DNA of 64,000 nucleotides, from IMG/VR virus record IMGVR_UViG_3300042482_000702, positions 62,001-126,000 of that record. One strand, given 5' to 3'. The position numbers were made by a program, and so were the translations under genes. A model generated the notes under the pieces. It was not told the DNA's origin, did no database searches, and worked only from the letters and a program-made list of their open reading frames with translations. Below, piece after piece: positions 3,611 to 39,252 of the stretch. Position 1 is the stretch's first letter. Each line of letters starts with the position of its first letter.

Positions 3611-5041
3611 TTATTGGATACAAACCACATCTCGATAAGTTGCGATGTCAGCAGCACCATTAAAAATACCAGCAGCGTTTGCACCAGTTGTTGGTGATAA
3701 TACAGTAATATTAGTTACAGTATTAACATTATTAACAGATATTATAGGACCCATAAATAAAATATTTCCATCAGATAACGCAGAAATTTTATTTGAGGGG
3801 AACCATTCATTTGTTGGTTCGTTTCTATATGATGCAAATGTAGTCCAAGTTCCGTCATTTAAACCAGTAGTTAATACTCTAGCAATACCAGTTTTTGTAC
3901 CCACCAGAGTTCCCACCTGTGTGAATTTACCCGCAAGAATAACTTTTCCTCCTTGACCAGGTTGGTCTAACATAGAAGTAATTGGCCCATTGCACTGTGG
4001 ATACCAACTAGTGTCTAAAACACCAGCAGCACTAAGTCTAACAGGATTTAATCCTGTAGAATTAAGACTACCTACCCCAGTAAATGAAGTAGTCCCTGTG
4101 TAACCAATCATAATTCTATTATTATTGTCTAACTGCATACAGGTTATACTACCTAAACCATCATTAGTTCTCGGGAAGACTGCGACATTAGAAGATGCAA
4201 AACTAGTATCGATTACACCATTTGCAGTAAGCTTTAGGATTCCACCATATGGGTTAAGAAAATTTCCAGCAACCAATATGCTCTGTTGGTCATTAGGTTG
4301 GACTAGAACAATCTTAACTGTCCCATTTACGGAATAAAATCCACTAGAGGCAAATGAAGTATCGGTACTTCCATTAACATTTAATCTAGCAACGTATCCA
4401 GCACCAGTAGTAGTAGTGGTTGTTACGGTATTGACATACCCACCTAAAATAAGTTTACCATCTGATTGAGTATCAACTGATAGAATTGTATAAGGGAATG
4501 AAGAGGCACCAGAAAAAGTATAATCTTTACTACCATCAGGATTTAACCGAATAATTCTCTGTATTGTTACCCCATCGTATGACGTTACAGTACCTACAAC
4601 AACTATTTTACCATTAGATTGTTTAACAATTGACATTGGACCCGGAACTCCTTCAGCAGTCGGAAAAACAGACCCAAAATTAAACCCACTCCCAACATTA
4701 AAAGTTCTATCAAGACTTAAATTATTCGTTAATTTTACTATACCTACTGAAGATGACCCAGAATAATTACTGAAAGTACCAATAATAATAGGACCTTGTG
4801 AAAACACTAAACTATAATCTTGGGATGGTGATGTGCTACAAGTACCTAAAGGCACCACATACCCTCTAACTATCGAAGATGTAGTAGTATATGTGTATCC
4901 TGTCAATAATTGACCTTTAGTTATATTTGATGCTAATAGGATTGGTGTGGTACTAGTACCAGTATATCCAAATAAGTTAAATGCTGATACGGCGTATGAA
5001 GACCCCGAATATTCCGCTTGTAATGTAAATCTAATATCCAT
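3611..5041 (-). CDS. Delta-60 repeat (DUF5122-type) beta-propeller virion/adhesin protein
   Basis: Repeated Q-S-(N/D)-G-K-I/L-(V/I)..G...RLN.DG..D..F blades. Confidence 0.8.
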   Translation of the reverse strand: MDIRFTLQAEYSGSSYAVSAFNLFGYTGTSTTPILLASNITKGQLLTGYTYTTTSSIVRGYVVPLGTCSTSPSQDYSLVFSQGPIIIGTFSNYSGSSSVGIVKLTNNLSLDRTFNVGSGFNFGSVFPTAEGVPGPMSIVKQSNGKIVVVGTVTSYDGVTIQRIIRLNPDGSKDYTFSGASSFPYTILSVDTQSDGKLILGGYVNTVTTTTTTGAGYVARLNVNGSTDTSFASSGFYSVNGTVKIVLVQPNDQQSILVAGNFLNPYGGILKLTANGVIDTSFASSNVAVFPRTNDGLGSITCMQLDNNNRIMIGYTGTTSFTGVGSLNSTGLNPVRLSAAGVLDTSWYPQCNGPITSMLDQPGQGGKVILAGKFTQVGTLVGTKTGIARVLTTGLNDGTWTTFASYRNEPTNEWFPSNKISALSDGNILFMGPIISVNNVNTVTNITVLSPTTGANAAGIFNGAADIATYRDVVCIQ

Positions 5042-8076: not shown

Positions 8077-11000
8077 TTACAGTACCTCGACCCAACTATT
8101 ATCCGGACAGAAATATATTATGTCGTTTGTTGCATCAGTACAATAACCAATGATTCGAACATTATTACCCGATACAGGTGGAGATATTGAACTGAACTCT
8201 CCAGCAGTTGTTGATACATATAGTATAGAACCTAAAGTCGCTGAGGTAAATGATGTTGTACTAAATTTAGCATAACCTCTTAATAACATTCCACCAGCAA
8301 TTGTTGTCCCTAACGCCATACCTAATAATCCTAATGATGTAACAACTGTTGTTGCATCTGCCAATGTCCAAGTCCCACCAGTACTATAATAATAAACTGA
8401 CCCGGCAGTTAATGATGTACCTACACCAAAATAAACAACTTCTCCCGCACCTCCGTTATTAACAGGTACTGTAAATATTTTATTTTTTTCAATGTTAAGA
8501 TTATTAACAAATGTTGTGTTACTTCTGTTTGCAGTAATATTACTACCTATAATGTTAGAATTATTAAAGGAAGATGGAATTCTATTATATGTACCACCAA
8601 GGATTGATGATAAAGACGCACAAGCCCAATTTCCATTACCAGCACCAACGAATGAACAATAACCAACAGCACAGTTTTGGTCACCACCACCAATAAATGA
8701 ACCTTTTTTACCACAGTTAATTGAACCACCCGCAATTGTTGTACAAGAATCACTTACACTATTACGAAATCCACCACCAATGAATGACCGTACCCCATAA
8801 GCACAATTTGACCAACCACCACCTATTGTTGAATTGACCCCTGACGCTATATTATTTATATTAGGATACGTACTAGAGTAATATTCATTATACCCACCTC
8901 CAATAAAACTTCCTGCTCCTCTGGCAATATTATGTTGGCCTCCTCCAATTGTTGAAGAGTATCCGAAAGATTTATTCAAACGTCCACCACTAACTGTTGA
9001 GGTAAATCCCGTCGCAATATTACCTACACTTCCCATCATAGGGAAATAACCTGGGGAACTTGTATTTCCAGTAACTTTAAATCCACCACCACCACCAATT
9101 GTAGAATAATTTCCAGAAGCAATATTCCCACTACCCCCACCTATTGTAGAATGACAACCACAAGTAACATTACAAATACCACCACCAATAACAGACCCAC
9201 AGGCGTTAGCTGTGTTCCCAATACCACCACCAATAAATGAAGAATTTCCACCACCTAAACTTTTTGTTAAATTCCTAACTAATGGTTCATTTCCAATTCC
9301 AAATACTTGAACCGAGCCTGTTGCTCCGGTAACGTTTATATCGGTATATCCAATGTAAGACCCAGAGGTATAAGTCGAAGCTGTTACAACAACATTTCTC
9401 GAACAAGCGTTATTATCAAAAGTTAATAATAAGTCATTAGTTGTAAAACAACTAGTTAAATTCCCAATAAACCTTAATGAACAATTTCCAATAACAATAG
9501 AAGATTGTATTTTTGGTGAATTACCCACCATATTTAAAACACCTCCAGCAATACCACCTTGGTATCCACAAACAACATTCACATGTCCACCACCTACAAA
9601 GGTCATATTAGTAGCCGATTTATTATTATTACCTGAAACTATCCCTGAACCATAACCACACGCATAATTACCACAACCACCTAAAATAGCCGCTCTAGTA
9701 CGAAAAGTTTTATTAGAAAGACCACCAGCAATAACCGCATCTTCACCACATTGACTAGTCGTTCCTGTTATAATATTACATCTACCACCACCAATAGTTG
9801 ACATAGTAGTTGAAATAAGATTAACTCTACCCCCAACAATTGATGAGAATGTCCCCCCACTAAGTACACGGTTATAAAATCCACCACCAATTGTTGAATC
9901 TCCTCCAAACGCTCTATTACAACTACCACCACCAATGAATGATAATGTTCCACAAGTACAATTTAACCAACCACCACCTATGGTTGAGCTATTACCGCAA
10001 GCTCTATTTAGACGACCTCCACCAATTGTTGAACAAGTACTAACAATACAGTTTGAACATCCCCCACCAATAGATGAATAACAGGAAGAAATTTTATTAT
10101 AACAACCACCACCAATAGATGAATACCTATTACCGACACAGTTAGATTTTCCACCACTAATAGTTGAACCAATAACATTCATCACTGTATTACAACAACC
10201 ACCACCAATAGTCGATGTATCACCAAACGCTTTGTTTAAAACACCACCACCAACTGTTGAATTGCTCTGGGTAGTACAATTTGAATTACCACCACCAATA
10301 AATGACCCTTCACCATTTGCTTTATTATTATTACCACCACCAATGAATGAACAATTTCCCTTTGCATAGTTTTTAAATCCACCCGCAATTGTTATATTCT
10401 TACCACCATCAGTAATTGTTGACCTATTTATAAAATATAATTCACCAAATGTTGTCCCAACATTATTTTGAAGGTTTACCAGAGTAACATCATAATAACT
10501 TGGATATCCAGTATTTGATAGAACAATAGAGTCAACATCGGATTGAATCGTTTTTCCGTAATTTGGGTTATACGATAAAATATTATTTCCAATGGTAAAA
10601 TATGGTGATACGTCACCATAAAAATATAAAGTAGCATAATTAGTTTTATAAGGATTACCTATAAAAATTGTTTGTTGACCCACAACATTTAATACACCAC
10701 CCCCTATAGTCGATGAACAACCTTGTATTGTATTTCCTTGACCACCTAATATTGTAGAATTTTTACATTTTATTTGATTAAGATATCCTCCCAAAATATT
10801 TGATGTTGTTCCTGAAGCAATATTACCTTGACCACCAACAACAACAGATGCATACCCAAATGCTATATTAGTCTTATATCCACTATAGGTACGTCCTCCA
10901 CCACCAACGAATGATAATGTTCCTGAAGCAATATTACAATTACCACCACCAACTGTTGATAGAGAACCTGATGCTTGGTTACGATAACCACCACCAATTG

Positions 11001-14000
11001 TTGACCGATAATTAGAAGCTGTATTACACTGACCACCACCGACTGTTGAATAACGTAGTGTCGCACAGTTTTTATCGCCTCCACCGATTGTTGTATAACT
11101 ATTAGATGCGATATTACCTCGACCACCACCGATTGTTGCAAAATCTCCAGAAGCAGTATTACCATAACCATACCACCCTCCATTATTAAAACACTTACCA
11201 CCACCACCAATTGTTGAACTAACACCGGAAGCTTTGTTATGACCACCACCACCAATTGTTGAGGTACTACCGGAAGCAATGTTATAACCACCTCCACCTA
11301 TTGTTGACCGATAAGTAGAAGCAGTATTATTTTCACCACCACCAATTGTTGTCCAATAGGCTGAAGCTTTATTACAAACACCCCCACCAACAGTAGAGTT
11401 TAAACCTCCGGATTTATTACAAGTTCCACCACCAATTGTTGAACCATAACCATAACTATTATTACACTTACCACCACCTATTGTTGCTCGAGGATTTGAA
11501 GCTGAATTATTTTCACCACCTCCAATTGTTGTATAGTAACCTGTTGCGCAGTTCCTAAAACCACCACCAATGGTTGACAATACACCAGAATTAAAACAAA
11601 TCGTAGTTCCAGTTAATAGACCTGTTGAATAAGTAAATGTTCCTCCGGAAGTATTATGCCCAATACCTCCACCAATTGTCACACCTAAAGATTTATTTTC
11701 ATTAGGTAATGATTGAATTACATTTCTATGTCCTCCACCAATAAATGACATTCTTGCGTTTGTTGTATTACGATAACCACCAACAACTGTTGAATAAGTC
11801 CCACTACTAATATTACATTTCCCTCCTAAAGACGCTGAATAATTCCCTATTGAAGTATTCAAAACACCACATCTAACAGACGAACAAGTACCACCACCTA
11901 ATACAATGACTGGAGGTTCAGGACTTGTTCCGCTAGTCCCCGCAGAACCAGTTGCTCCACTAGTCCCTGACGAACCATTTACTCCACTAGTTCCTGACGA
12001 ACCATTTACTCCACTAGTTCCTGATGTTCCTCTAGTTCCTGACGAACCTGACGAACCTGTCGCTCCACTAGTTCCTGACGAACCTGTCGCTCCACTAGTT
12101 CCTGACGAACCATTTACTCCACTAGTTCCTGACGAACCTGTTGCCCCACTAGTTCCTGACGAACCATTTACTCCACTAGTTCCTGACGAACCATTTACTC
12201 CACTAGTTCCTGACGAACCTGTCGCTCCACTAGTTCCTGATGTTCCTGTTGCCCCACTAGTTCCTGATGTTCCTCTAGTTCCTGACGAACCTGACGAACC
12301 ATTTGCTCCACTAGTCCCTGACGAACCATTTACTCCACTAGTTCCTGACGAACCTGTTGCTCCACTAGTTCCTGATGTTCCTCTAGTTCCTGACGAACCT
12401 GACGAACCTGTCGCTCCACTAGTTCCTGACGAACCTGTCGCTCCACTAGTTCCTGACGAACCATTTACTCCACTAGTTCCTGACGAACCTGTTGCCCCAC
12501 TAGTTCCTGACGAACCTGTTGCCCCACTAGTTCCTGACGAACCATTTACTCCACTAGTTCCTGACGAACCTGTCGCTCCACTAGTTCCTGACGAACCATT
12601 CGCTCCCGATGTTCCTGATGTTCCTCTATTTCCTGACGAACCTGACGAACCTGTTGCACCACTAGTTCCTGACGAACCTGTTGCACCACTAGTTCCTGAC
12701 GAACCATTTGCTCCCGATGTTCCTGACGAACCATTTGCTCCCGATGTTCCTGACGCTCCACTAGTTCCCGATGAACCTGTTGCTCCCGATGTTCCTGACG
12801 CTCCACTAGTTCCCGATGAACCTGTTGCTCCCGATGTTCCTGACGAACCATTTGCTCCCGATGTTCCTGACGCTCCACTAGTTCCCGATGAACCTGTTGC
12901 TCCCGATGTTCCTGATGAACCTGTTGCTCCCGATGTTCCTGACTCTCCACTAGTTCCCGATGTTCCTGACTCTCCACTAGTTCCCGATGAACCTGTTGCA
13001 CCACTAGTTCCTGATGAACCTGTTGTTCCACTAGTTCCTGACGCTCCACTAGTTCCTGACGAACCTGTTGTTCCACTAGTTCCTGACGCTCCACTAGTTC
13101 CTGACGAACCATTTGCTCCCGATGTTCCCGATGAACCTGTTGCTCCCGATGTTCCTGACGAACCATTTGCTCCCGATGTTCCTGACGCTCCACTAGTTCC
13201 CGATGAACCTGTTGCTCCACTAGTTCCTGACGAACCTGTTGCTCCCGATGTTCCTGACGCTCCACTAGTTCCTGATGAACCTGTTGCACCACTAGTTCCT
13301 GATGTTCCGGATGAACCACTAACACCTGAAGTTCCACTAGAACCATTTGCTCCTGATGTTCCTGATGTTCCACTAGTACCTGAAGTCCCTTTGGTTCCGG
13401 AAAAACCACTAGAACCACTAGAACCAGCAGCCCCCGACGCTCCATTAATATTTGTTACCCACGAGTTAAAAGTTCCCGTTCCTGTTACACTAGTCACCGT
13501 AACAGTTAAAGCACCTGTATTTATATTGTAAGATTGGACAGTACCAATTAATGATTCAGTCGCAGAATTAGCGATAATTAAACTTTGACCTACTGTATAA
13601 GATAACCCTGAATATGTTGTAATCGATAGAGTACTACCACTCGATAAAGTTGATAAGTTTATACTATCCGTCGATTGACCTATAATAGCTAAACTAGTTC
13701 CTGAAGAACCGTCTTTACCTGATGTTCCATTAGTGCTCACAGGAGCAATTACCAACAACCCATTTGAACCAACACAAACTGAACATCCTGATGAACTATT
13801 AAAACTACAAATAGATAAGTCATTAACAAAAGTAGTACAACTTCTATTTGCCGTTACGTTACTACCAATGATGTTAGAATTAGTAAAACCGGAAGATATT
13901 ATATTACATTGACCACCAAGTATTGCCGAGTAATCTGAACAAACAGTGTTTAATTTACCACCACCAATAAATGAACAACCACTAAATACCTGATTACCCA

Positions 14001-15468
14001 TTCCACCAACAACAACTGAAGCGTCCCCCAAGACCCTGTTATATACATTATTGCCATCGGCAGTAGTATAAGTACCTCCACCAATAAAAGAACTACAACC
14101 CGTAATACAGTTTTTATTTCCTCCACCAATAGTTGAAAAATTTCCACAAACCTTGTTACGCATACCACCACTAATAGTTGAACCACATTCACTCACCAAA
14201 TTATTATAACCACCAAGTATTGACGAGAAACGTTCACAAACAGTATTTAATTTACCACCACCGATAAAAGAACAACCACTAAATACCTGATTACCCATTC
14301 CACCAACAACAACTGAAACGTTCCCATAAACACCGTTACATACAAAAGTATAACTATCTCCAATATATGCTCCAGTACCTCCACCAATAAAAGAACAATT
14401 ACCCGTAATATAGTTTTTACTTCCCCCACCAATAATTGAACAACATCCACAAACCTTGTTACACCTACCACCAAGTATTGCCGAGTAATCTGAACAAACA
14501 GTATTTAATCTACCACCACCAATAAATGAACAACCACTAAATACCTGATTACCCATTCCACCAACAACAACTGAAGCGTCCCCATAAACACTGTTACATA
14601 CAAAAATACTACTAATGTTATTATATGTACAAGTACCTCCACCAACAAACGAGAAATCACTTGCAATACAGTTTCTATTTCCTCCACCAATAGTTGAACA
14701 TCTTCCATAAACCTTGTTACCTTTACCACCACTAATTGTAGAAGCAGAACAACAAGCAATATTACAACATCCACCACCAATTGTTGAATTATTCCCATAA
14801 GTTTTATTTCCTTGACCACAACTATCACCACCGCCACCACCAATGAATGAATATTCACCGTAAGTACAGTTGTGATATCCACCACCAACAAATGAATGGT
14901 TCCCACACGCGAGGTTTTCTTCTCCACCACCAACGAATGAACAACCACCGATAGCTCTATTACAATTACCACCACCAATAGTTGAATAATCTCCACCAGC
15001 GGTATTTAATCTTCCACCACCAATAAATGATGTTGTACCTGACGCTACATTATCTTGACCACCAACGACCACTGAAAAATTACATGACGCTGTATTTCCA
15101 CTACCACCTAAAGACGCTGAATAAGTTCCGGACGCATCATTTGAAACATCACGTCTAACCGATGAATTAACACCAGCACCCAAAACAATAACTGCCGATG
15201 AACCGGAATCACCACCTATTTTTAAAACCAAATCTGAATCAGTAATACCAGTATAATACCAATATTCCGAAACACCATCCAAAACTGTTACATATCTACC
15301 CCCTTCATATGTTGTTGCTCCGGTTAGAATACCAACCGTTAACCCAATATATCTGAATGAGGAAACAACATTAATATTAGCTTGAGTAGTGCTAGTCCAT
15401 GGACCATACCTTGAATCTAATGATTTAGGTGAAAGAGTTGTTAAATTATCGTTAATTATAATTGCCAT
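8077..15468 (-). CDS. Giant tail-fibre-like protein (2463 aa): two STIGGG-repeat beta-helix modules separated by a collagen-like stalk
   Basis: N-term DSRYGPW...GLTVGI...EYWY head; dozens of S(T/F)IGGG.xN repeats; (G-X-Y)n; C-term cement-like domain ending IYFCPDNSWVEVL. Confidence 0.85.
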   Translation of the reverse strand: MAIIINDNLTTLSPKSLDSRYGPWTSTTQANINVVSSFRYIGLTVGILTGATTYEGGRYVTVLDGVSEYWYYTGITDSDLVLKIGGDSGSSAVIVLGAGVNSSVRRDVSNDASGTYSASLGGSGNTASCNFSVVVGGQDNVASGTTSFIGGGRLNTAGGDYSTIGGGNCNRAIGGCSFVGGGEENLACGNHSFVGGGYHNCTYGEYSFIGGGGGDSCGQGNKTYGNNSTIGGGCCNIACCSASTISGGKGNKVYGRCSTIGGGNRNCIASDFSFVGGGTCTYNNISSIFVCNSVYGDASVVVGGMGNQVFSGCSFIGGGRLNTVCSDYSAILGGRCNKVCGCCSIIGGGSKNYITGNCSFIGGGTGAYIGDSYTFVCNGVYGNVSVVVGGMGNQVFSGCSFIGGGKLNTVCERFSSILGGYNNLVSECGSTISGGMRNKVCGNFSTIGGGNKNCITGCSSFIGGGTYTTADGNNVYNRVLGDASVVVGGMGNQVFSGCSFIGGGKLNTVCSDYSAILGGQCNIISSGFTNSNIIGSNVTANRSCTTFVNDLSICSFNSSSGCSVCVGSNGLLVIAPVSTNGTSGKDGSSGTSLAIIGQSTDSINLSTLSSGSTLSITTYSGLSYTVGQSLIIANSATESLIGTVQSYNINTGALTVTVTSVTGTGTFNSWVTNINGASGAAGSSGSSGFSGTKGTSGTSGTSGTSGANGSSGTSGVSGSSGTSGTSGATGSSGTSGASGTSGATGSSGTSGATGSSGTSGASGTSGANGSSGTSGATGSSGTSGANGSSGTSGASGTSGTTGSSGTSGASGTSGTTGSSGTSGATGSSGTSGESGTSGTSGESGTSGATGSSGTSGATGSSGTSGASGTSGANGSSGTSGATGSSGTSGASGTSGATGSSGTSGASGTSGANGSSGTSGANGSSGTSGATGSSGTSGATGSSGSSGNRGTSGTSGANGSSGTSGATGSSGTSGVNGSSGTSGATGSSGTSGATGSSGTSGVNGSSGTSGATGSSGTSGATGSSGSSGTRGTSGTSGATGSSGTSGVNGSSGTSGANGSSGSSGTRGTSGTSGATGTSGTSGATGSSGTSGVNGSSGTSGVNGSSGTSGATGSSGTSGVNGSSGTSGATGSSGTSGATGSSGSSGTRGTSGTSGVNGSSGTSGVNGSSGTSGATGSAGTSGTSPEPPVIVLGGGTCSSVRCGVLNTSIGNYSASLGGKCNISSGTYSTVVGGYRNTTNARMSFIGGGHRNVIQSLPNENKSLGVTIGGGIGHNTSGGTFTYSTGLLTGTTICFNSGVLSTIGGGFRNCATGYYTTIGGGENNSASNPRATIGGGKCNNSYGYGSTIGGGTCNKSGGLNSTVGGGVCNKASAYWTTIGGGENNTASTYRSTIGGGGYNIASGSTSTIGGGGHNKASGVSSTIGGGGKCFNNGGWYGYGNTASGDFATIGGGRGNIASNSYTTIGGGDKNCATLRYSTVGGGQCNTASNYRSTIGGGYRNQASGSLSTVGGGNCNIASGTLSFVGGGGRTYSGYKTNIAFGYASVVVGGQGNIASGTTSNILGGYLNQIKCKNSTILGGQGNTIQGCSSTIGGGVLNVVGQQTIFIGNPYKTNYATLYFYGDVSPYFTIGNNILSYNPNYGKTIQSDVDSIVLSNTGYPSYYDVTLVNLQNNVGTTFGELYFINRSTITDGGKNITIAGGFKNYAKGNCSFIGGGNNNKANGEGSFIGGGNSNCTTQSNSTVGGGVLNKAFGDTSTIGGGCCNTVMNVIGSTISGGKSNCVGNRYSSIGGGCYNKISSCYSSIGGGCSNCIVSTCSTIGGGRLNRACGNSSTIGGGWLNCTCGTLSFIGGGSCNRAFGGDSTIGGGFYNRVLSGGTFSSIVGGRVNLISTTMSTIGGGRCNIITGTTSQCGEDAVIAGGLSNKTFRTRAAILGGCGNYACGYGSGIVSGNNNKSATNMTFVGGGHVNVVCGYQGGIAGGVLNMVGNSPKIQSSIVIGNCSLRFIGNLTSCFTTNDLLLTFDNNACSRNVVVTASTYTSGSYIGYTDINVTGATGSVQVFGIGNEPLVRNLTKSLGGGNSSFIGGGIGNTANACGSVIGGGICNVTCGCHSTIGGGSGNIASGNYSTIGGGGGFKVTGNTSSPGYFPMMGSVGNIATGFTSTVSGGRLNKSFGYSSTIGGGQHNIARGAGSFIGGGYNEYYSSTYPNINNIASGVNSTIGGGWSNCAYGVRSFIGGGFRNSVSDSCTTIAGGSINCGKKGSFIGGGDQNCAVGYCSFVGAGNGNWACASLSSILGGTYNRIPSSFNNSNIIGSNITANRSNTTFVNNLNIEKNKIFTVPVNNGGAGEVVYFGVGTSLTAGSVYYYSTGGTWTLADATTVVTSLGLLGMALGTTIAGGMLLRGYAKFSTTSFTSATLGSILYVSTTAGEFSSISPPVSGNNVRIIGYCTDATNDIIYFCPDNSWVEVL
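11925..13445 (-). repeat. Collagen-like GSS/GTS/GAT/GAN/GVN coding repeat, 9- and 27-bp units
   Basis: About 1.5 kb of ccactagttcctgacgaacc / gctcccgatgttcc units. Confidence 0.95.
13915..14590 (-). repeat. Three near-identical blocks encoding VVVGGMGNQVFSGCSFIGGG(K/R)LNTVC
   Basis: aaatacctgattacccattccaccaacaacaactgaa near 13984, 14281 and 14539. Confidence 0.9.
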
Positions 15469-23848: not shown

Positions 23849-24703
23849 TTAAATTTTATAATTCATAATTAAAAGTTCTTCTCCCATTGTTTGTGCCTTA
23901 CCCTTCTTAGCCGCAGCCGCTTTTGCAAATAATTTTCTCTCCCACTGATATTGATTCTCCGGAAACCACACTTGTAATTGGGGAAAATCATAGTAAGATA
24001 ATGAGAACTTCCCTTGAATACCTTTTAAAGTGTCTGCCAATCTTTCGTGGTCTTCTCTTCCAAAATCATGATTAGAATAATAACTTCCCTCACCCACAAT
24101 GTAATATGGGGGGTCAACATAAAAATAACTTGTAGGGCCATCATACTTCTCTATAACCGTTTGGAAATCCATATTTTCAATATGTGTTATACTTTCAAAT
24201 AATTTTTGCCATTCAGGTTTTTTTAATTTATTTTTGAATGATGTGAATTTTGAATGGTAATTACCTTTTAAATCTATAAATTTTGATTTAGATGGATTCG
24301 CACCTGAAAAAACTTGAGTTAACACATAGACATACTTCGCAGCAATCTCATAATTTGGGTCTTCACCAATAATTAAATCGTCTGAATAAATTTCTTTTTG
24401 AAACTTATCAAAATTTTCTCCACAAATAGGATTAGTTGGGACGACATTTTTCTCCTGAACCACCAATTTCTCACATTCTTCTAACAATCGTCTATGATTA
24501 ACCACACAACGATACAGATTGTGATTGAGGGAATTAAAGTCGTTATAAACCACTTTTTTTAGATTGGGGTATTCCTCTAACTTCATTCCAAAGAATATCC
24601 AAAATTGACCTGAAAATGGTTCACAATATGTCTCAATGTCTTTTGGGATGAATGGAACTATGAATGTTTGCATCTTACTCTTACCGCCTATATAACTTAT
24701 CAT
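23849..24703 (-). CDS. D12-class (Dam-like) N6-adenine DNA methyltransferase, specificity unknown
   Basis: SYIGGK, EPFSG, YNDFN, FYVDPPY, LSYY. Confidence 0.9.
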   Translation of the reverse strand: MISYIGGKSKMQTFIVPFIPKDIETYCEPFSGQFWIFFGMKLEEYPNLKKVVYNDFNSLNHNLYRCVVNHRRLLEECEKLVVQEKNVVPTNPICGENFDKFQKEIYSDDLIIGEDPNYEIAAKYVYVLTQVFSGANPSKSKFIDLKGNYHSKFTSFKNKLKKPEWQKLFESITHIENMDFQTVIEKYDGPTSYFYVDPPYYIVGEGSYYSNHDFGREDHERLADTLKGIQGKFSLSYYDFPQLQVWFPENQYQWERKLFAKAAAAKKGKAQTMGEELLIMNYKI

Positions 24704-32627: not shown

Positions 32628-33689
32628 TTACGATGTTTTTACATAACTTAATCTAACAATATTGTCAACAACTTCTTCCATTGGTTCATCTATTGGTTCT
32701 TCAACGACTTCTTCTATTGGTTCATCTATTAGTTCCTCCAATGGTTCTTCAACGACTTCTTCTATTGGCTCCTCGATTGGTTCTTCAACGACTTCTTCTA
32801 TTGGTTCATCTATTAGTTCCTCCAATGGTTCTTCAACGACTTCTTCTATTGGCTCCTCGATTGGTTCTTCAACGACTTCATCTATTGGTTCATCTATTGG
32901 TTCTTCAACGACTTCTTCTATTGGTTCATCTATTAGTTCCTCCAATGGTTCTTCAACGACTTCTTCTATTGGCTCCTCGATTGGTTCTTCAACGACTTCT
33001 TCTATTGGTTCATCTATTAGTTCCTCCAATGGTTCTTCAACGACTTCTTCTATTGGCTCCTCTATTAGTTCCTCCAATGGTTCTTCGATTGGCTCCTCAA
33101 ACACATCTGATTGTACAATATTTTCCGTATAACCCAATTCAGTTACAGTAAATTCATCGATTATAATATCTGAAGATTTTTCAATAACAGTAACAGGTAT
33201 CACAACTTGATTATTTTCATCAATTAATTCATCATATTTTACAAAAAAATGTAAAGATGTTAATGATATAATTGGTAATAAACCACCACTTAAAAATGCT
33301 AACCACCTTTTCAACGATACTACATCAGTAAGGTCTGAACCAAACATTTCCCATATTGGACCTGTCAATTCAACCCACGACTTAAATAAGACACTATTAG
33401 CATCAATCTCTTTATAGGAAAAGAATATATTACCAATCATCTGTATGAAAGTTACCATTCCAAACATAAACCAGACACCTCCTTTAATTTTATTTGTTGC
33501 CGCCAATAAAGCTGTCATAGCACCTATTTCAATCGCAATTGATAAATATATTGCCCAACTAATTGGATTTGTTAAATTATACCACGAAACAACGTGTGAT
33601 ATTGATATTCCAGCAACCAAAAAAATTGGTACTAAAAACATAGCCCTGATTGGATGAGTCTTAACCCATTCTAAAATTATTTTATTCAT
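32628..33689 (-). CDS. Four-helix membrane protein with long acidic EEPIEEVV repeat tail
   Basis: Four hydrophobic segments, then about 140 aa of E/P/I/V repeats. Confidence 0.75.
   Translation of the reverse strand: MNKIILEWVKTHPIRAMFLVPIFLVAGISISHVVSWYNLTNPISWAIYLSIAIEIGAMTALLAATNKIKGGVWFMFGMVTFIQMIGNIFFSYKEIDANSVLFKSWVELTGPIWEMFGSDLTDVVSLKRWLAFLSGGLLPIISLTSLHFFVKYDELIDENNQVVIPVTVIEKSSDIIIDEFTVTELGYTENIVQSDVFEEPIEEPLEELIEEPIEEVVEEPLEELIDEPIEEVVEEPIEEPIEEVVEEPLEELIDEPIEEVVEEPIDEPIDEVVEEPIEEPIEEVVEEPLEELIDEPIEEVVEEPIEEPIEEVVEEPLEELIDEPIEEVVEEPIDEPMEEVVDNIVRLSYVKTS
32670..33100 (-). repeat. 12-bp-based coding tandem repeat (EEPI/EEVV/EEPL/EELI/DEPI)
   Basis: Recurring ttggttcttcaacgacttcttcta / ttagttcctccaatgg units. 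Confidence 0.9.
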
Positions 33690-34025: not shown

Positions 34026-34826
34026 TTACATATAATCGAAAAGTATCGAACTTTCATTCCTTAATTTTCTTAAGGCTTTTTCCTTAATCTGCCTCACTCT
34101 TTCTTTAGTGAGATTAAAATCACCACCAATGTCTTCTAAAGTTCTTGGAGTGCCCGTTAACCCAAAATAATCTCCAACAATGGTTTTCTCTCGATTATCC
34201 AAAACATCCAATAAAGAAATTAATTGTTGTTTTAATTCATCTTTGGTATTAAAGATTGCGTCCGGCATATCAGCCTGTTCATTCTTTATAATATCAACTA
34301 AAGTATCTCCGTCCTCGTTAATATTCATATCTAAATCAACGATTGATGGTAAATTTTGGAACTTATCCGAGAGTTTACCTCCCGTCGATTCAATTTCTTT
34401 TTTAGCTCTTTGTAAATCCTGAACCACATTAACCGGAAGTCTAATAGTCCTAGCATTATCGTTTAATGATTGGAGAATGGATTGTTTAACCCACCACACA
34501 GCATAGGATATAAATCTTAAATCTCTAGACCAATCAAAATGACTAATCGCCTTCATAAGTCCTAAATTACCTTCAGCAATTAAATCGGGAAAATCTAACC
34601 CTTGATTTTGATATTGTTTAGCCACAGTAATCACAAAACGTAAATTCCCCTCAAGTAATTCTTTATTAATTGACTCTAATTCTTTTTCCGTTAGATTTCC
34701 CGAACTAATCAATTTTGATAACTCTCTTTCCCTGTCCGGAGTCATCACTTTAATTTTACGAATGTCCTTTAAATACAATTGTATTTCTTCTTGATTAATA
34801 GGAATCCCCGAATTTTTCTCTTTCAT
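34026..34826 (-). CDS. rpoD: RNA polymerase sigma-70 factor, RpoD/SigA type without region 1.1
   Basis: NLRFVITVAKQY, DLIAEGNLGLMKA, RFISYAVWWVKQSI, RTIRLP, TLEDIG..FNLTKERVRQIKEKALRKLR; start moved to MKEKNSG. Confidence 0.95.
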   Translation of the reverse strand: MKEKNSGIPINQEEIQLYLKDIRKIKVMTPDRERELSKLISSGNLTEKELESINKELLEGNLRFVITVAKQYQNQGLDFPDLIAEGNLGLMKAISHFDWSRDLRFISYAVWWVKQSILQSLNDNARTIRLPVNVVQDLQRAKKEIESTGGKLSDKFQNLPSIVDLDMNINEDGDTLVDIIKNEQADMPDAIFNTKDELKQQLISLLDVLDNREKTIVGDYFGLTGTPRTLEDIGGDFNLTKERVRQIKEKALRKLRNESSILFDYM

Positions 34827-34827
34827 A

Positions 34828-35394
34828 TTATTTTGAATATTGGTTAAGTAATTGTAATTCTTCTTTTGATAATGACTCGATTCCACCATCCGCTAATTTA
34901 TCAAATAATTCGTCAAATGTTGGTGTTCTTTTTTTATTTTTAAGTTGACTAATATCGTCATCATCATCTTCATCAACAAATTCAGATAAATCTAAAAAGA
35001 ATTCATTTCGAATATTATTCATTAACATAGTTCGTACCTCATAGTCATTTTCATCACAAATTTTGTTTTTACCTGACATATAGTCATTAATACCATCGTT
35101 AAATAGATGTTTAGCAACTTCATCCGGTAATCCGTATGACAAATTGTCATTTGTATATGGTACTAAAAAATAACTTATTGTGTCATAGTCTAATATCATA
35201 TCCACATAGTCTTTAACATCCTGATAGGAATCTAAAGTTGAGATTGTGTACACGGTTGATTCAGGACCAAAGTAAAAATTGACCTTGGGGATGTCCGAAA
35301 TAACACTTAATTCTTCCGCAATTTGTTCTGCGAATTCTTGGGGGTTGTCATTTTTTGTAAGTACAAATAAAATGTATTTGGTTAAGTTCTCCAT
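34828..35394 (-). CDS. Protein with DUF6576-like C-terminal helix bundle
   Basis: FDELFDKLADGGIESLSKEELQLL resembles the IDxILDKISxxGxxSLTxEE tail of Bacteroidota proteins. Confidence 0.6.
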   Translation of the reverse strand: MENLTKYILFVLTKNDNPQEFAEQIAEELSVISDIPKVNFYFGPESTVYTISTLDSYQDVKDYVDMILDYDTISYFLVPYTNDNLSYGLPDEVAKHLFNDGINDYMSGKNKICDENDYEVRTMLMNNIRNEFFLDLSEFVDEDDDDDISQLKNKKRTPTFDELFDKLADGGIESLSKEELQLLNQYSK

Positions 35395-35433: not shown

Positions 35434-35487
35434 GTAAAATTATTTTAATATCCGCCAAATTTGTAACTATCTTTATTTATTAACAAA

Positions 35488-36072
35488 TTATCCTACACTA
35501 TTTTTGAAAAGTTTTGGGTCATACCAATAACACCCTATACAACTACCATTATAATCACTCGCCCCATCAATATACGATGTATTATATCCTAAAGTTTTTG
35601 CGTCAAATCTCTCCCCAGTTAACTTACAAGATTTACAATCACTTCTTTTTAATAAATTAGCTTGTCGACAAAGTGGTTGGAAATCCTCCATTTTTTGTGA
35701 TTTTAAAACTAAAACATTTAAATCATCATATCTTCCATTTTTATGGTCACACTCAATACTATTTTGAGCTGTTCCTGAAAAACCTGTGTGTACACATTTT
35801 TTCATAACAATACTTTTTACAATATCGGTTCTAATACTTCTATTATGATATCCGTTATCAACACCATTTAATTTAATTGTCCAAGAATCACCTCTTCCTA
35901 AAGTACTATATAAAAATTTACCCTTAAGACTTCTCATCCAATTACAACCATTGGTGAAAAATAAATCACTAAACTCACCGATAAATTCTGTTTTACTAAC
36001 AATTCTACTCTCACCATTTTCATTTGGTTTTGCAAGTTCAATAAATAAATCTGATAAACATTTTTTTTTCAT
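35488..36072 (-). CDS. NlaIII/IceA1-like HNH restriction endonuclease
   Basis: IECDHKNGRYDD...FQPLC..AN..KR..CKSCK.TG.RFDA...Y.GSCIGCYWYDP tracks H. pylori IceA1 as I recall it. Confidence 0.8.
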   Translation of the reverse strand: MKKKCLSDLFIELAKPNENGESRIVSKTEFIGEFSDLFFTNGCNWMRSLKGKFLYSTLGRGDSWTIKLNGVDNGYHNRSIRTDIVKSIVMKKCVHTGFSGTAQNSIECDHKNGRYDDLNVLVLKSQKMEDFQPLCRQANLLKRSDCKSCKLTGERFDAKTLGYNTSYIDGASDYNGSCIGCYWYDPKLFKNSVG

Positions 36073-36076
36073 TAAA

Positions 36077-36832
36077 TTAAATATTTTGTATTCTATTATT
36101 ACTATATTCTACTTGTGATTTACTAATCTCACTACCTATAAAATTTCTATTAATTATCTTACAAGCAATTCCGGTTGTCCCTGTACCCATAAATGGGTCA
36201 TATACAATATCTAATTCTTTTGTATAAATGTTTAATAATTTTGTACAAAATTCTGTAGAATAAGTCGCTTTATTAACATTAGTACTTTCATCATTATTTT
36301 TTGCTGTAATAAAATTATCAATAATTTCATAATAATTTTGACCTTTTGGTGAAGTTTTTACAACTTTTTTATTACAGTTAAATGTTTTTATTTCTTTTTT
36401 TCTAACAATCACAAATACAAATTCCACAATTCTATTTAACCTATTATAAGAAGCCGGATGAGGAATACTATTACTTTTTTTCCAAATTATAGTATCAGCA
36501 ATTGTAAACTCTGTTTTAGATATAATACCAGATACCATTGTATAGGGTAATCCAGGATTTTCAATAGAGTAAGAAAAATTGTAAAGTATCACCCCATCTT
36601 TAATTAAAACTTTATCAAATTCGTTAAATATATTAATTGTCCATTGATTATACTCTTCTTCTGATTTCCAATCTTGATATTCATCATACCTTGGTTGTTT
36701 ATCCGCATACCCCCCCTTACGTTTAGTCATATTATATGGTGGGGATGTTAGAACACAATGTATTGATTTTGGTTCCATTTTTTTGATTGTCTTAAGACAA
36801 TCTTCATTATAAAAAGTGTTAAGTTGTATCAT
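36077..36832 (-). CDS. Beta-class N4-cytosine/N6-adenine DNA methyltransferase
   Basis: LTSPPYN before VYDPFMGTGTT; start moved to MIQLNTFYNEDC. Confidence 0.92.
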   Translation of the reverse strand: MIQLNTFYNEDCLKTIKKMEPKSIHCVLTSPPYNMTKRKGGYADKQPRYDEYQDWKSEEEYNQWTINIFNEFDKVLIKDGVILYNFSYSIENPGLPYTMVSGIISKTEFTIADTIIWKKSNSIPHPASYNRLNRIVEFVFVIVRKKEIKTFNCNKKVVKTSPKGQNYYEIIDNFITAKNNDESTNVNKATYSTEFCTKLLNIYTKELDIVYDPFMGTGTTGIACKIINRNFIGSEISKSQVEYSNNRIQNI

Positions 36833-36882
36833 ATTATTAAATATAATCATTAACATCCTTTAAGTCAAAAAAAAATTCCTCA

Positions 36883-39252
36883 TTATTGAGAAACATAACT
36901 AATATTTTCCTCCTTTTTAATCCTGACCACATTGTCTGCCCAATTAGTGACTAATGGGTTATGTGTGATGACAAATATCTTATCAAAATACTCTTTAATC
37001 TTGGTAAAGAACTCTGATATCATATCCAAATTATCGTTGGATACCTTCCCGAATACCTCATCAAACACCACAACGTTCGCTCTTGGTAATGAACATATCT
37101 TACTCAACACCGCTCTCAACGCTAATGACGCAATTGACCTTTCATATCCGGACCCGGATGCCATTGGTTTTTCAATTTGAGTGTTATTATCAATCATAAG
37201 GAAATCTACCTCATTCTTGTCGTTAATCTTAACCTCTAACCTAAAGTGGCAACTATCCTCCAATAACCTCTGAAGTTCACTATTAATAAGTGGCATCATT
37301 GTTTTCATTATGAGTTTGGTTACACCATTTTTACCAAAGATTTCCAAATAGATTTTGTATATTTTTTCTTTCTCCGCTTCTTCCCCAATTTTTCTAATTG
37401 TCTCCAAGTTAGATGTTATCTTGGTTGTAAGATTGGTTATTGTAAATTTATTGTTAGAGATACTGGTTTCAATAGTTTTTTTCTCACCTTCAAGTTCGTC
37501 TATTCTAATACCCGCTTTGATTAACAATCCATCGGTTTTGTTATTTTCAATAACCTTATCCTGAACTTCGGTGTATCTATCCAACTTGGTTTTCAACGCG
37601 TCAATCATTAGTTGGAATCTCTCAACACTTAATTCATATTTTTCTTTAATAAGTTTGTTTTTCTCATACTCATCAAATTCTTTTTTAAGATTAACAAAAC
37701 CTTCCTCTTTGCTGGTTAACTCACGCATTAACCCCTCTAATTCCCCTTTGTGCGTGATAAACCCCGCAAGCCCCCCAATTTTTGCATTGGTAATTGCGGC
37801 GTTCATAAGTTCAATACCACAGTGTTCACATTTGATTCCACCATCGACAGAACTTTTAAGTTCCTCAATGTTTTTAATCTTTGCGTTGTTGTCAGCTTGT
37901 TTTACAACTAAATCCTTAATCTCTTGTTTTACCTCATCGTGTTTATCCTCGTGGTAAAATTCGGATGGTTCAACAACCTTAACCCCGTCTCTATCTGAAA
38001 TGGATTTGGTTTTTTGTATCTCCAACCCGTTAATCTCTTCTTGAACCTTATCCGGAGAAACCATTGTTAATTCCTTATCAATGTTATGTTTGGATTTTAA
38101 TAACCCATCTCTATATTCTTGACCTTTAAGGATTCTCTCTTTAGTATCACCCAATTGACCATCCAATGTAAGATTAGTTTCCGTTAGATTATCAATCGTA
38201 TCTTGACTGGTTTGGTTATCCGTTTTAAGTTGTTCCGAGTTATAGATGTTAGACAACATTCCTTTTGAAAATTCACTATAAATTTCTTTTGCTGTTTCTT
38301 CCTTACGCTTAAGAAAATCTAACCCCATAAACCTTGAGAGAACCTGACCCCTCGCCGTGGGTTTGGCATCAATTAGTTCTTCCAAGTTGGTGGCAGTGGT
38401 TAGGATGGTCATTAAGAAGTCCTCTTTAGTCCCGATAGATGTTTTAATAAACGCCTCGGTCTCTCTTCGTTGTTCTCCGGTGAAGTTCTGCAAACTACCA
38501 TCAGACAATCTTTTATAAAAGTCCAACTCGGTCTTAACCGTCCATTCATTCTTCTTGGATAACTTTCTCTCAATATTTCTCAATATGATATACTCATCAC
38601 CGTCAATTGTAATTTCACCCTTTACAGCAACTTTATTTCTTTCAGTGAATCTATTAAATATCTCCTCAGCCTTTGATGTCTTGGTGGTCTCATTAAAGAA
38701 TAAGAACATAAGTAAATCCACTGTAAGAACCGTCTTACCTCCAAAATTTGGTGGGTTTGATTCCACAACCGTAATCCCATCACATTTCTCAAAATCTATC
38801 TTCTGATTCTCACCATAGGATAGGAAGTTTGAAAACTCAATGTTTTTAATATACCATCGTTTAAATGGTGCCGCATCGGTTTGGGTCATTGATAATCTAT
38901 TATCCACAACTCCATTAAGTTGGTAGATATCATCATAATGTCCAATGTTCCCTTTTGACTCCAAGAATGAACGAACTAACTCTAATTGATAGTTCTCATC
39001 CAAAATGTTAAAGGAGATGTCTACGGTATGTGTGGTGTCGTCAGCAACCTTTGTTTTTGTAATAACATTAACATTGTTGGTTTCATACTTCTTTTGGAAA
39101 TAATGACGAACACTCTTTATCTTTTCTTGCGTAAAATTCTCGGCATAATCCTCCCACACAATCTGTAGGTAAGGATTATCCAAGTTTGTGATATCTAAAT
39201 CTTTTATCATTATTGTATAATTAAATTCTATTGCGGGATTAAATAAATCCAT
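36883..39252 (-). CDS. sbcC: SbcC/Rad50 (gp46-like) ATPase with about 120-aa N-terminal extension
   Basis: IEFSNFLSYG, Walker A variant NPPNFGGKT, CEHC hook, signature variant ASGSGYE, VFDEVFG, VITHN. Confidence 0.9.
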   Translation of the reverse strand: MDLFNPAIEFNYTIMIKDLDITNLDNPYLQIVWEDYAENFTQEKIKSVRHYFQKKYETNNVNVITKTKVADDTTHTVDISFNILDENYQLELVRSFLESKGNIGHYDDIYQLNGVVDNRLSMTQTDAAPFKRWYIKNIEFSNFLSYGENQKIDFEKCDGITVVESNPPNFGGKTVLTVDLLMFLFFNETTKTSKAEEIFNRFTERNKVAVKGEITIDGDEYIILRNIERKLSKKNEWTVKTELDFYKRLSDGSLQNFTGEQRRETEAFIKTSIGTKEDFLMTILTTATNLEELIDAKPTARGQVLSRFMGLDFLKRKEETAKEIYSEFSKGMLSNIYNSEQLKTDNQTSQDTIDNLTETNLTLDGQLGDTKERILKGQEYRDGLLKSKHNIDKELTMVSPDKVQEEINGLEIQKTKSISDRDGVKVVEPSEFYHEDKHDEVKQEIKDLVVKQADNNAKIKNIEELKSSVDGGIKCEHCGIELMNAAITNAKIGGLAGFITHKGELEGLMRELTSKEEGFVNLKKEFDEYEKNKLIKEKYELSVERFQLMIDALKTKLDRYTEVQDKVIENNKTDGLLIKAGIRIDELEGEKKTIETSISNNKFTITNLTTKITSNLETIRKIGEEAEKEKIYKIYLEIFGKNGVTKLIMKTMMPLINSELQRLLEDSCHFRLEVKINDKNEVDFLMIDNNTQIEKPMASGSGYERSIASLALRAVLSKICSLPRANVVVFDEVFGKVSNDNLDMISEFFTKIKEYFDKIFVITHNPLVTNWADNVVRIKKEENISYVSQ

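What the first reader, a model, noticed from the sequence alone, without database searches (positions are those of the whole stretch)
35488..36832. Phage-borne R-M-like pair: NlaIII/IceA1-type endonuclease with a beta-class SPPY methyltransferase
Seen: adjacent, co-oriented MTase then HNH nuclease, inserted between sbcC and the sigma operon. Established: NlaIII/IceA1 cut CATG and normally pair with an N6-adenine CATG MTase; SPPY beta-class enzymes are often N4-cytosine. Seen: the first Zn site is degenerate (CVHT, CRQA instead of CxxC) while the HNH core DH...N and the second Zn site (CKSC, CIGC) remain; CATG is present in this window. Inference: a non-canonical pairing, possibly used for host DNA degradation or exclusion of competing phages.
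Basis: partly seen in the sequence, partly recalled or inferred. Interest (0 to 1): 0.65.

Follow-up and report, generated by a model that had tools for sequence, protein, structure and literature searches.

The report
Mobile restriction-modification cassette in a lake jumbo phage
A 322-kb freshwater phage carries, as an optional 1.4-kb insert, a DNA methylase and an NlaIII/IceA-type cutting enzyme that together look like a working restriction-modification pair, a known kind of system with an unusual methylase partner.

Summary
Two co-oriented minus-strand genes 4 bp apart encode a beta-class amino-methyltransferase (PF01555, motif IV SPPY) and a 194-aa ICEA/NlaIII-family HNH nuclease (PF05315, E 4e-39). 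They lie between an SbcC-like gene and a DUF6576/sigma-70 pair in a 322-kb lake-water jumbo phage.

Contigs from related lake phages join sbcC directly to the DUF6576 gene and skip the 1445 bp that hold both genes, so the pair is an accessory indel. The same cassette sits in three different neighbourhoods in 264-308-kb contigs.

The "degenerate first Zn site" is not a degeneration. Canonical Campylobacterales IceA-like enzymes have the same single-Cys pattern, and every family-invariant residue is kept.

The pairing differs from the type systems, which use a D12/alpha methylase. However, ICEA nucleases in public data sit beside at least five kinds of methylase. Beta-class partners are common in viral contigs, and the SPPY partner marks one viral clade.

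CATG is the second most avoided tetramer in the phage (O/E 0.26), and GATC is absent.

Most likely this is a mobile Type II R-M module that cuts unmodified CATG, with the methylase probably making m4C. Specificity, methylated base and biological role are all inferred, not shown. Moderate interest.

The parts
36077..36856 (-). Beta-class DNA amino-methyltransferase gene (longest ORF 259 aa; likely start at M9 = 36832, giving 251 aa)
   Evidence: PF01555 E 1.4e-37, phrog_67 E 2e-43. Homologues of 251-253 aa start at the position of M9. Best solved relative by sequence is the rotifer N4-cytosine MTase 8s9m, E 1e-19.
36734..36745 (-). Motif IV, SPPY (residues 38-41)
   Evidence: Read directly from the sequence. 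SPPY is conserved in all orthologues checked.
36176..36199 (-). Motif I, DPFMGTGT (residues 220-227), C-terminal to motif IV, which is the beta order
35488..36072 (-). ICEA/NlaIII-family HNH endonuclease gene (194 aa): N-terminal winged-helix-like domain (residues 1-73) plus HNH domain (74-194)
   Evidence: PF05315 E 3.9e-39. AF2 model has pLDDT 92. The HNH half aligns to EcoKMcrA (Z 5.5), GVE2 HNH (4.9) and Cap5 (4.9); the N-terminal half aligns to RepE/BirA winged helices.
35530..35796 (-). Catalytic and zinc core: C93, D109-H110, N139, C146/C149, C178/C181
   Evidence: D109, H110, N139, C146, C149, C178 and C181 are invariant in an 89-sequence family alignment, where C93 is in at least 90% of rows. 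C93 is invariant in the alignment with canonical Campylobacterales members.
35438..36882 (.). The cassette as an indel: the segment absent from related lake-phage contigs
   Evidence: Joints 35437->36883 (X7, X10) and 35412/35433->36883 (X16), with sides of 75-92 nt and about 22 nt of filler. Depth is 23-45 for the joined form against 1-14 over the cassette.
36883..39252 (-). Flank: SbcC-like ATPase gene
   Evidence: phrog_77 E 1.4e-39, SbcC Walker B
34026..35394 (-). Flank: 188-aa gene with a DUF6576 C-terminus, and a sigma-70 family gene
   Evidence: The same order is seen in L155 and L190.

Best explanation
This is a two-gene Type II restriction-modification module carried as an optional insert by a freshwater jumbo phage. 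The upstream gene makes a beta-class amino-methyltransferase that marks the phage's own DNA. The downstream, probably co-translated, gene makes an NlaIII/IceA-family HNH nuclease that cuts the same short site when it is unmarked. The site is most likely CATG. The mark is most likely N4-methylcytosine (m4CATG), because motif IV is SPPY; N6-adenine is the alternative. The nuclease would then hit any unmarked DNA in the infected cell, whether host chromosome or a co-infecting phage that lacks the cassette. The phage is protected by methylation and by having shed three quarters of its CATG sites. Shown: gene identities, intact catalytic residues, co-inheritance as a unit, indel status, CATG depletion. 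Inferred: recognition site, methylated base, nuclease activity, and which DNA is the real target.
For: Family assignments are. All residues that are invariant across the ICEA family are kept, including in comparison with canonical D12-partnered enzymes. The model is confident and has the HNH fold. The MTase-nuclease pair recurs in 264-, 283- and 308-kb contigs in three different neighbourhoods, and in viral contigs with either gene order. Nucleases that sit next to the SPPY methylase form one clade (14 rows, SH-aLRT 98). The whole pair is present or absent as one 1445-bp block among related lake phages. CATG is the second most avoided of all tetramers (228 observed against 873 expected, z -26), evenly across all 16 flanking contexts. 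The window nuclease is 40-47% identical to canonical IceA-like enzymes. SPPY is the motif of most N4C methylases and DPPY that of N6A ones (PMC8885841). No M.NlaIII-type D12 methylase lies elsewhere in the phage; its one D12 gene is only 23% identical to ICEA-linked ones.
Against: No enzyme activity, methylome or cleavage data exist. Specificity is carried over from relatives at 40-47% identity. The methylase is far better conserved (72-84%) than the nuclease (39-64%). Seven of about twelve distinct viral orthologues of the methylase at 62% identity or more have no ICEA gene within about 1.7-4 kb, so the methylase may be the selected part. CATG is also depleted in relatives that have the methylase alone, so the depletion could come from host enzymes rather than from this nuclease. 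The PDB scores of the methylase for an m4C enzyme (74 bits) and an m6A enzyme (66 bits) are close.
Confidence: 0.6

Rival explanations
1. The methylase is the working part. It is an anti-restriction methylase that shields packaged phage DNA from host CATG (or other) restriction. The nuclease is a dispensable passenger that adds little or is decaying.
For: The methylase has thousands of relatives, with over 120 clusters at 66-90% identity, against 135 relatives for the nuclease. Half of the close viral orthologues lack the nuclease. In L190 the slot holds an unrelated 185-aa ORF and a D12 methylase instead. CATG is depleted with or without the nuclease.
Against: The nuclease keeps every family-invariant residue and an open frame in all cassettes examined. 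It forms its own clade that co-occurs with this methylase. In the window's lineage the two genes are gained or lost together.
Confidence: 0.15
2. The pair works as a selfish, homing-like element. In mixed infections the nuclease cuts cassette-free relatives, and repair or exclusion spreads the cassette. Any benefit to the phage is incidental.
For: Cassette-plus and cassette-minus forms coexist in the same lake samples, and the minus form is the more abundant. The cassette sits in different neighbourhoods in different phages.
Against: No intron, intein or target-site duplication is seen at the borders. A 4-bp cutter would hit a rival genome at many sites rather than at the empty locus. This explanation overlaps with the best one and is not exclusive of it.
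Confidence: 0.15
3. It is a true R-M pair, but the site is not CATG. This viral clade has drifted to another short sequence.
For: The nuclease clade is long-branched and only 40-47% identical to canonical enzymes. The methylase belongs to a different class from known CATG methylases, so nothing ties it to CATG directly.
Against: Polar residues that are invariant family-wide outside the catalytic core are kept (N41, R47, Q126, Q132, K142, R143, R155, Y174). Apart from GATC, which has no sites left to protect, CATG is the tetramer under the strongest avoidance.
Confidence: 0.2

Closest known systems
NlaIII (Neisseria lactamica) and IceA1/HpyI (Helicobacter pylori) CATG restriction-modification systems
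   Same: The nuclease belongs to the same Pfam family (PF05315) and has the same length class. It has the same D-H...N core, the same two C-terminal CxxC pairs and the same single Cys at the two upstream positions. It sits tightly next to a methylase gene.
   Different: The partner there is a D12 (alpha-class, DPPY) N6-adenine methylase of about 335 aa. Here it is a 251-aa beta-class SPPY enzyme. The host is a phage, not a bacterium. The nuclease lacks the roughly 30-residue C-terminal tail of the Campylobacterales enzymes.
Chlorovirus PBCV-1 CviAII (CATG) and CviAI (GATC) virus-encoded R-M systems
   Same: A large dsDNA virus carries its own Type II R-M pair. CATG and GATC are the two sites in play there, and the same two tetramers are the most avoided in this phage (PMC7248222).
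   Different: R.CviAII is not classed in the NlaIII/HNH group (PMC2441816). M.CviAII makes m6A. PBCV-1 keeps and methylates its sites rather than shedding them.
Beta-class N4-cytosine methyltransferases (e.g. rotifer N4CMT, PDB 8s9m; M.PvuII)
   Same: Motif order IV then I, motif IV SPPY, similar size, and the best solved-structure match by sequence.
   Different: Identity is low, the target site of the phage enzyme is unknown, and m4C output is inferred from the motif only.
ICEA nuclease plus beta-class DPPY methylase pairs in uncultured viral contigs
   Same: Same two-gene architecture, viral setting and size (for example L094, L102, L116).
   Different: Those methylases are only 21-27% identical to this one and carry DPPY (expected m6A). 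Their nucleases fall in other clades.

Membership tests
ICEA/NlaIII nuclease family (PF05315) | Full-length match to the family profile above the curated cut-off | tested here: met
   134.9 bits against a cut-off of 24, profile positions 4-199 of 218
ICEA/NlaIII nuclease family (PF05315) | His-Me finger core (D-H ... N) and two C-terminal CxxC pairs | tested here: met
   D109, H110, N139, C146/C149 and C178/C181 are invariant in 89 sequences. The fold matches HNH nucleases at Z 4.9-5.5.
ICEA/NlaIII nuclease family (PF05315) | Same cysteine pattern as canonical members at the 'first site' | tested here: met
   CVHTG and PLCRQAN here against CVMLG and PLCKAAN in enzymes scoring 370-460 bits
ICEA/NlaIII nuclease family (PF05315) | Cleavage at CATG | not testable with these tools
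   Only indirect: 40-47% identity to canonical members, and genome-wide CATG avoidance
NlaIII/HpyI-type R-M system | Partner is a D12 (alpha) CATG N6-adenine methylase | tested here: not met
   The partner is PF01555 beta-class with SPPY. The phage's only D12 gene lies 11 kb away and is 23% identical to ICEA-linked D12 enzymes.
Beta-class DNA amino-methyltransferase (PF01555) | Motif IV N-terminal to motif I, plus a profile match | tested here: met
   SPPY at residue 38, DPFMGTGT at 220, PF01555 E 1.4e-37
N4-cytosine methyltransferase | Produces N4-methylcytosine | not testable with these tools
   The SPPY motif and the best PDB hit (N4CMT) favour it, but an m6A enzyme (DpnA-like 5hfj) scores nearly as well.
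Type II restriction-modification system | Adjacent methylase and nuclease genes inherited as a unit | tested here: met
   4-bp gap. The cassette is conserved in L148, L152 and L155. The whole pair is one indel. Nuclease clade and methylase type coincide.
Type II restriction-modification system | Methylase protects the site that the nuclease cuts | not testable with these tools
   Needs enzymology or a methylome
Free-standing homing endonuclease | Cuts the empty allele and spreads by repair; long or degenerate target | tested here: inconclusive
   Plus and minus alleles coexist. But the nuclease family is a 4-bp cutter family, and no border repeats are seen.

The most novel reading that the evidence does not exclude
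The switch from an adenine-type (DPPY/D12) to a cytosine-type (SPPY) methylase could be functional. Many bacteria protect CATG by m6A from their own NlaIII-like systems. A phage nuclease that ignores m6A but is blocked by m4C, paired with an m4C methylase, could cut even a CATG-methylated host, or rival phages that borrowed host methylation, while sparing its own DNA. That would be a restriction system re-keyed to a different mark on the same site and spread as a mobile cassette among lake jumbo phages.
Probability: 0.1. Interest if true: 0.75.

Novelty: new variant of a known kind. Interest (0 to 1): 0.45.

Why it matters
Complete restriction-modification pairs are rare in sequenced phage isolates. 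No record among 50,697 GenBank phages encodes an ICEA homologue. Here the pair is shown to be a mobile, optional block in an abundant and recurrent lake jumbo-phage lineage. This offers a natural plus/minus system for asking what a virus gains from carrying its own restriction enzyme. It also shows that the NlaIII/IceA nuclease family is partnered with at least five kinds of methylase. That makes it a useful case for studying how nucleases and methylases are re-matched, and a possible source of CATG enzymes with new methylation sensitivity.

Tried and rejected
Sequence search of the nuclease against PDB found nothing.

Foldseek against PDB gave no match at E <= 0.001. Only the slower all-against-all aligner brought out HNH and winged-helix matches, at modest Z.

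I first read the data as repeated independent capture of ICEA nucleases next to a resident methylase. The reasons were incongruent identities and the nuclease lying on either side. The tree does not support capture from different ICEA clades: all SPPY-linked nucleases form one clade.

I tested whether the phage's D12 methylase (window 23849-24703) is the real CATG partner. It is Dam-like, below the family cut-off, and only 23% identical to ICEA-linked D12 enzymes.

I looked for a GATC nuclease that might explain the total lack of GATC. Neither a DpnII-family nor a MutH/Sau3AI-family gene was found.

The 185-aa ORF that fills the nuclease slot in L190 is unrelated to ICEA by profile comparison.

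The promoter scan found no more sites than chance.

A literature mention of 'm4CATG' in Haloarchaea (PMC4752239) may be a misprint for CTAG, going by my own knowledge of Haloferax methylomes. I did not use it.

Two nucleases of the SPPY clade (L084, L086) have no methylase in their fragments, which are 23% and 7% complete, so nothing can be concluded from them.

Full report
**What is there**

The window is bases 62001-126000 of a 322,477-bp IMG/VR virus record that CheckV rates as complete. The record recurs in lake-water metagenomes from many studies between 2019 and 2024.

At the reported place there are two minus-strand ORFs. The first is 36077..36856 (259 aa). The second is 35488..36072 (194 aa). 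It starts 4 bp after the stop of the first and has no Shine-Dalgarno sequence of its own.

The first ORF is a PF01555 N6_N4 methylase (E 1.4e-37; phrog_67). It has SPPY at residues 38-41 and DPFMGTGT at 220-227, which is the beta motif order.

The second ORF matches PF05315 (ICEA) at 134.9 bits, E 3.9e-39, over profile positions 4-199 of 218.

Upstream lies an SbcC-like gene. Downstream lie a 188-aa gene with a DUF6576 tail and a sigma-70 gene.

**The nuclease**

An AlphaFold model built on 89 homologues is confident (pLDDT 92). It has two parts:
- Residues 1-73 align to winged-helix DNA-binding domains (RepE Z 5.4, BirA 5.1).
- Residues 74-194 align to HNH nucleases (EcoKMcrA Z 5.5, phage GVE2 HNH 4.9, Cap5 4.9, ZRANB3 4.2).

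These are modest scores, but they agree with each other.

Across 89 family members D109, H110, N139, C146, C149, C178 and C181 are invariant, and C93 is nearly so.

I pulled canonical family members out of Campylobacterales genomes (Pfam 370-461 bits, about 228 aa, each followed by a D12 methylase). Aligned with the phage protein, they read CVMLG and PLCKAAN where the phage protein reads CVHTG and PLCRQAN. Only a few distant members (P0095, P0109) carry CxxC at both places.

Nothing in the sequence suggests an inactive enzyme.

**The methylase**

Its best match among solved structures is the rotifer N4-cytosine methylase N4CMT (8s9m, E 1e-19, SPPY). Next come an H. pylori DpnA-like adenine methylase (E 4e-17), CcrM and M.MboIIA.

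SPPY is the motif of most bacterial N4C enzymes and DPPY that of N6A enzymes (PMC8885841; PMC2890505). I therefore lean to m4C, but this rests on the motif and on close scores, not on a measurement.

**Is the pair a unit?**

Yes, on four counts.
1. The same MTase-then-ICEA cassette occurs in contigs of 264, 283 and 308 kb, in three different neighbourhoods. One of them (L155) has the window's own order: SbcD ... SbcC - MTase - ICEA - (two extra genes) - DUF6576 - sigma.
2. Other viral contigs carry the pair with the nuclease on the other side.
3. In a tree of 146 ICEA nucleases, those that sit next to an SPPY methylase form one clade (12 of 14 rows, SH-aLRT 98). This was the quick tree, because the careful search did not finish.
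4. Contigs of related phages in three lake metagenomes join position 35437 (or 35412/35433) directly to 36883, with about 22 nt between. They skip 1445-1470 bp, which is both genes and nothing else. That form has depth 23-45, against 1-14 over the cassette. These contigs were laid at 85% likeness, so they are relatives rather than the same strain.

No border repeats are evident.

The methylase is much better conserved than the nuclease (72-84% against 39-64% between cassettes). Among about twelve distinct viral orthologues of the methylase at 62% identity or more, seven have no ICEA gene within about 1.7 to 4 kb. In L190 the slot after the methylase holds an unrelated 185-aa ORF and a D12 methylase. 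The SbcC-to-DUF6576 gap is therefore a variable spot in which the SPPY methylase is the steadier tenant.

**How unusual is the pairing?**

I classified methylase genes within 1.4 kb of 169 ICEA nuclease genes. These came from 80 bacterial loci, 65 viral loci, Campylobacterales genomes and the cassettes. The partners were:

| Partner methylase(s) | Loci |
|---|---|
| Permuted 262-aa PF01555-like enzyme alone | 32 |
| Permuted 262-aa enzyme plus a D12 enzyme | 30 |
| D12 alone | 23 |
| Beta-class DPPY | 21 |
| Beta-class SPPY | 16 |
| C5 plus permuted enzyme | 13 |
| Beta-class, motif IV not read | 5 |
| C5 alone | 1 |
| None | 28 |

Beta-class partners are nearly all viral. The pairing therefore departs from the two type systems, but not from the family at large. 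What is particular here is the SPPY form, which is confined to one viral clade.

No GenBank phage record encodes an ICEA homologue at E <= 1e-5. A 2017 survey counted two viral members of the family (PMC5714182).

**Which site?**

There is no direct evidence. The indirect evidence is as follows:
- The nuclease is 40-47% identical to canonical IceA-like enzymes. It keeps the polar residues that are invariant across the family outside the catalytic core.
- In the whole phage genome CATG occurs 228 times against 873 expected (O/E 0.26, z -26). That makes it the second most avoided of all 136 strand-symmetric tetramers. The avoidance is even across all sixteen flanking contexts, which argues for the bare 4-bp site.
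- The 7 kb around the cassette has no CATG at all.

Against reading too much into this, relatives that have the methylase without the nuclease are also CATG-poor. The pressure may therefore come from host enzymes.

The phage has two more methylases. One is a Dam-like D12 enzyme at 23849-24703, which is not of the ICEA-linked kind. The other is a second PF01555 gene just outside the window.

**Most likely mechanism**

This is a mobile Type II R-M module. The methylase marks CATG on phage DNA, probably as m4C. The nuclease cuts unmarked CATG in whatever other DNA shares the cell.

Whether the useful target is the host chromosome or a cassette-free rival phage cannot be told from sequence. Whether the module mainly serves itself cannot be told either. 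The coexistence of plus and minus forms in the same lakes makes inter-phage conflict a fair guess.

PBCV-1, a chlorovirus, is the nearest functional precedent. It carries R-M pairs for CATG and for GATC (PMC7248222), though R.CviAII is not an ICEA enzyme.

**Verdict**

The 'degenerate zinc site' claim is a misreading. 'Non-canonical' overstates the case. This is a new variant of a known kind of system, of moderate interest.

Noticed in passing
whole genome G000 (window 1-64000 included): GATC does not occur once in 322,477 bp (about 900 expected, z -36). Two relatives' loci (L148, L155) also have none in 12.7 kb, while a third (L152) has 37. No DpnII-family or MutH/Sau3AI-family nuclease gene was found in the phage.
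   Followed up: partly
window 23849-24703 (-): A Dam-like D12 methylase gene (TIGR00571 at 58.8 bits, below the cut-off) in a genome that has no GATC to methylate. Its target is unknown.
   Followed up: partly
G000:C1:59572-60297 (-), just outside the window: A third methylase gene, a second PF01555 member (E 4e-35).
   Followed up: no
L005-L083 (for example L016:4593-5729): In 29 loci, mostly Clostridia, a conserved gene of about 378 aa and unknown function (a weak EVE-domain hint) sits between the ICEA nuclease and the permuted 262-aa methylase.
   Followed up: no
L160, L162, L165, L166 and 26 other loci: Many bacterial ICEA nucleases are flanked by two methylases at once: a permuted 262-aa PF01555-like enzyme upstream and a D12 enzyme downstream.
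   Followed up: partly
L230, L232-L237, L242-L245, L247, L249-L252, L255-L259: Viral contigs with distant (about 30% identical) SPPY methylases have no CATG at all in 4-9 kb, and some have no GATC either. CATG avoidance appears widespread in these uncultured phages.
   Followed up: no
L112, L115, L119, L128, L131, L132, L141, L146: ICEA nuclease homologues occur in giant-virus metagenome bins (GVMAG contigs), mostly next to D12 methylases, and form their own clade.
   Followed up: no
L190:4789-6239: In a 138-kb relative the slot after the SPPY methylase holds a 185-aa ORF with no family match and a D12 methylase. This could be a different nuclease-methylase pair.
   Followed up: partly
window 32628-33689 (-): A 353-aa protein with a membrane-like N-terminus and a long, highly acidic tandem repeat (EEPIEE/EEVVEE units).
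   Followed up: no
window 8077-15468 (-): A 2463-aa protein with Gly/Cys-rich repeats and a long collagen-like GSSGTSG tract. It explains the local G+C peak (0.51 at 12-13 kb). Probably a fibre protein.
   Followed up: no
window 3998-4086 (-): The single tRNA gene in the window, tRNA-Leu(UAA).
   Followed up: no
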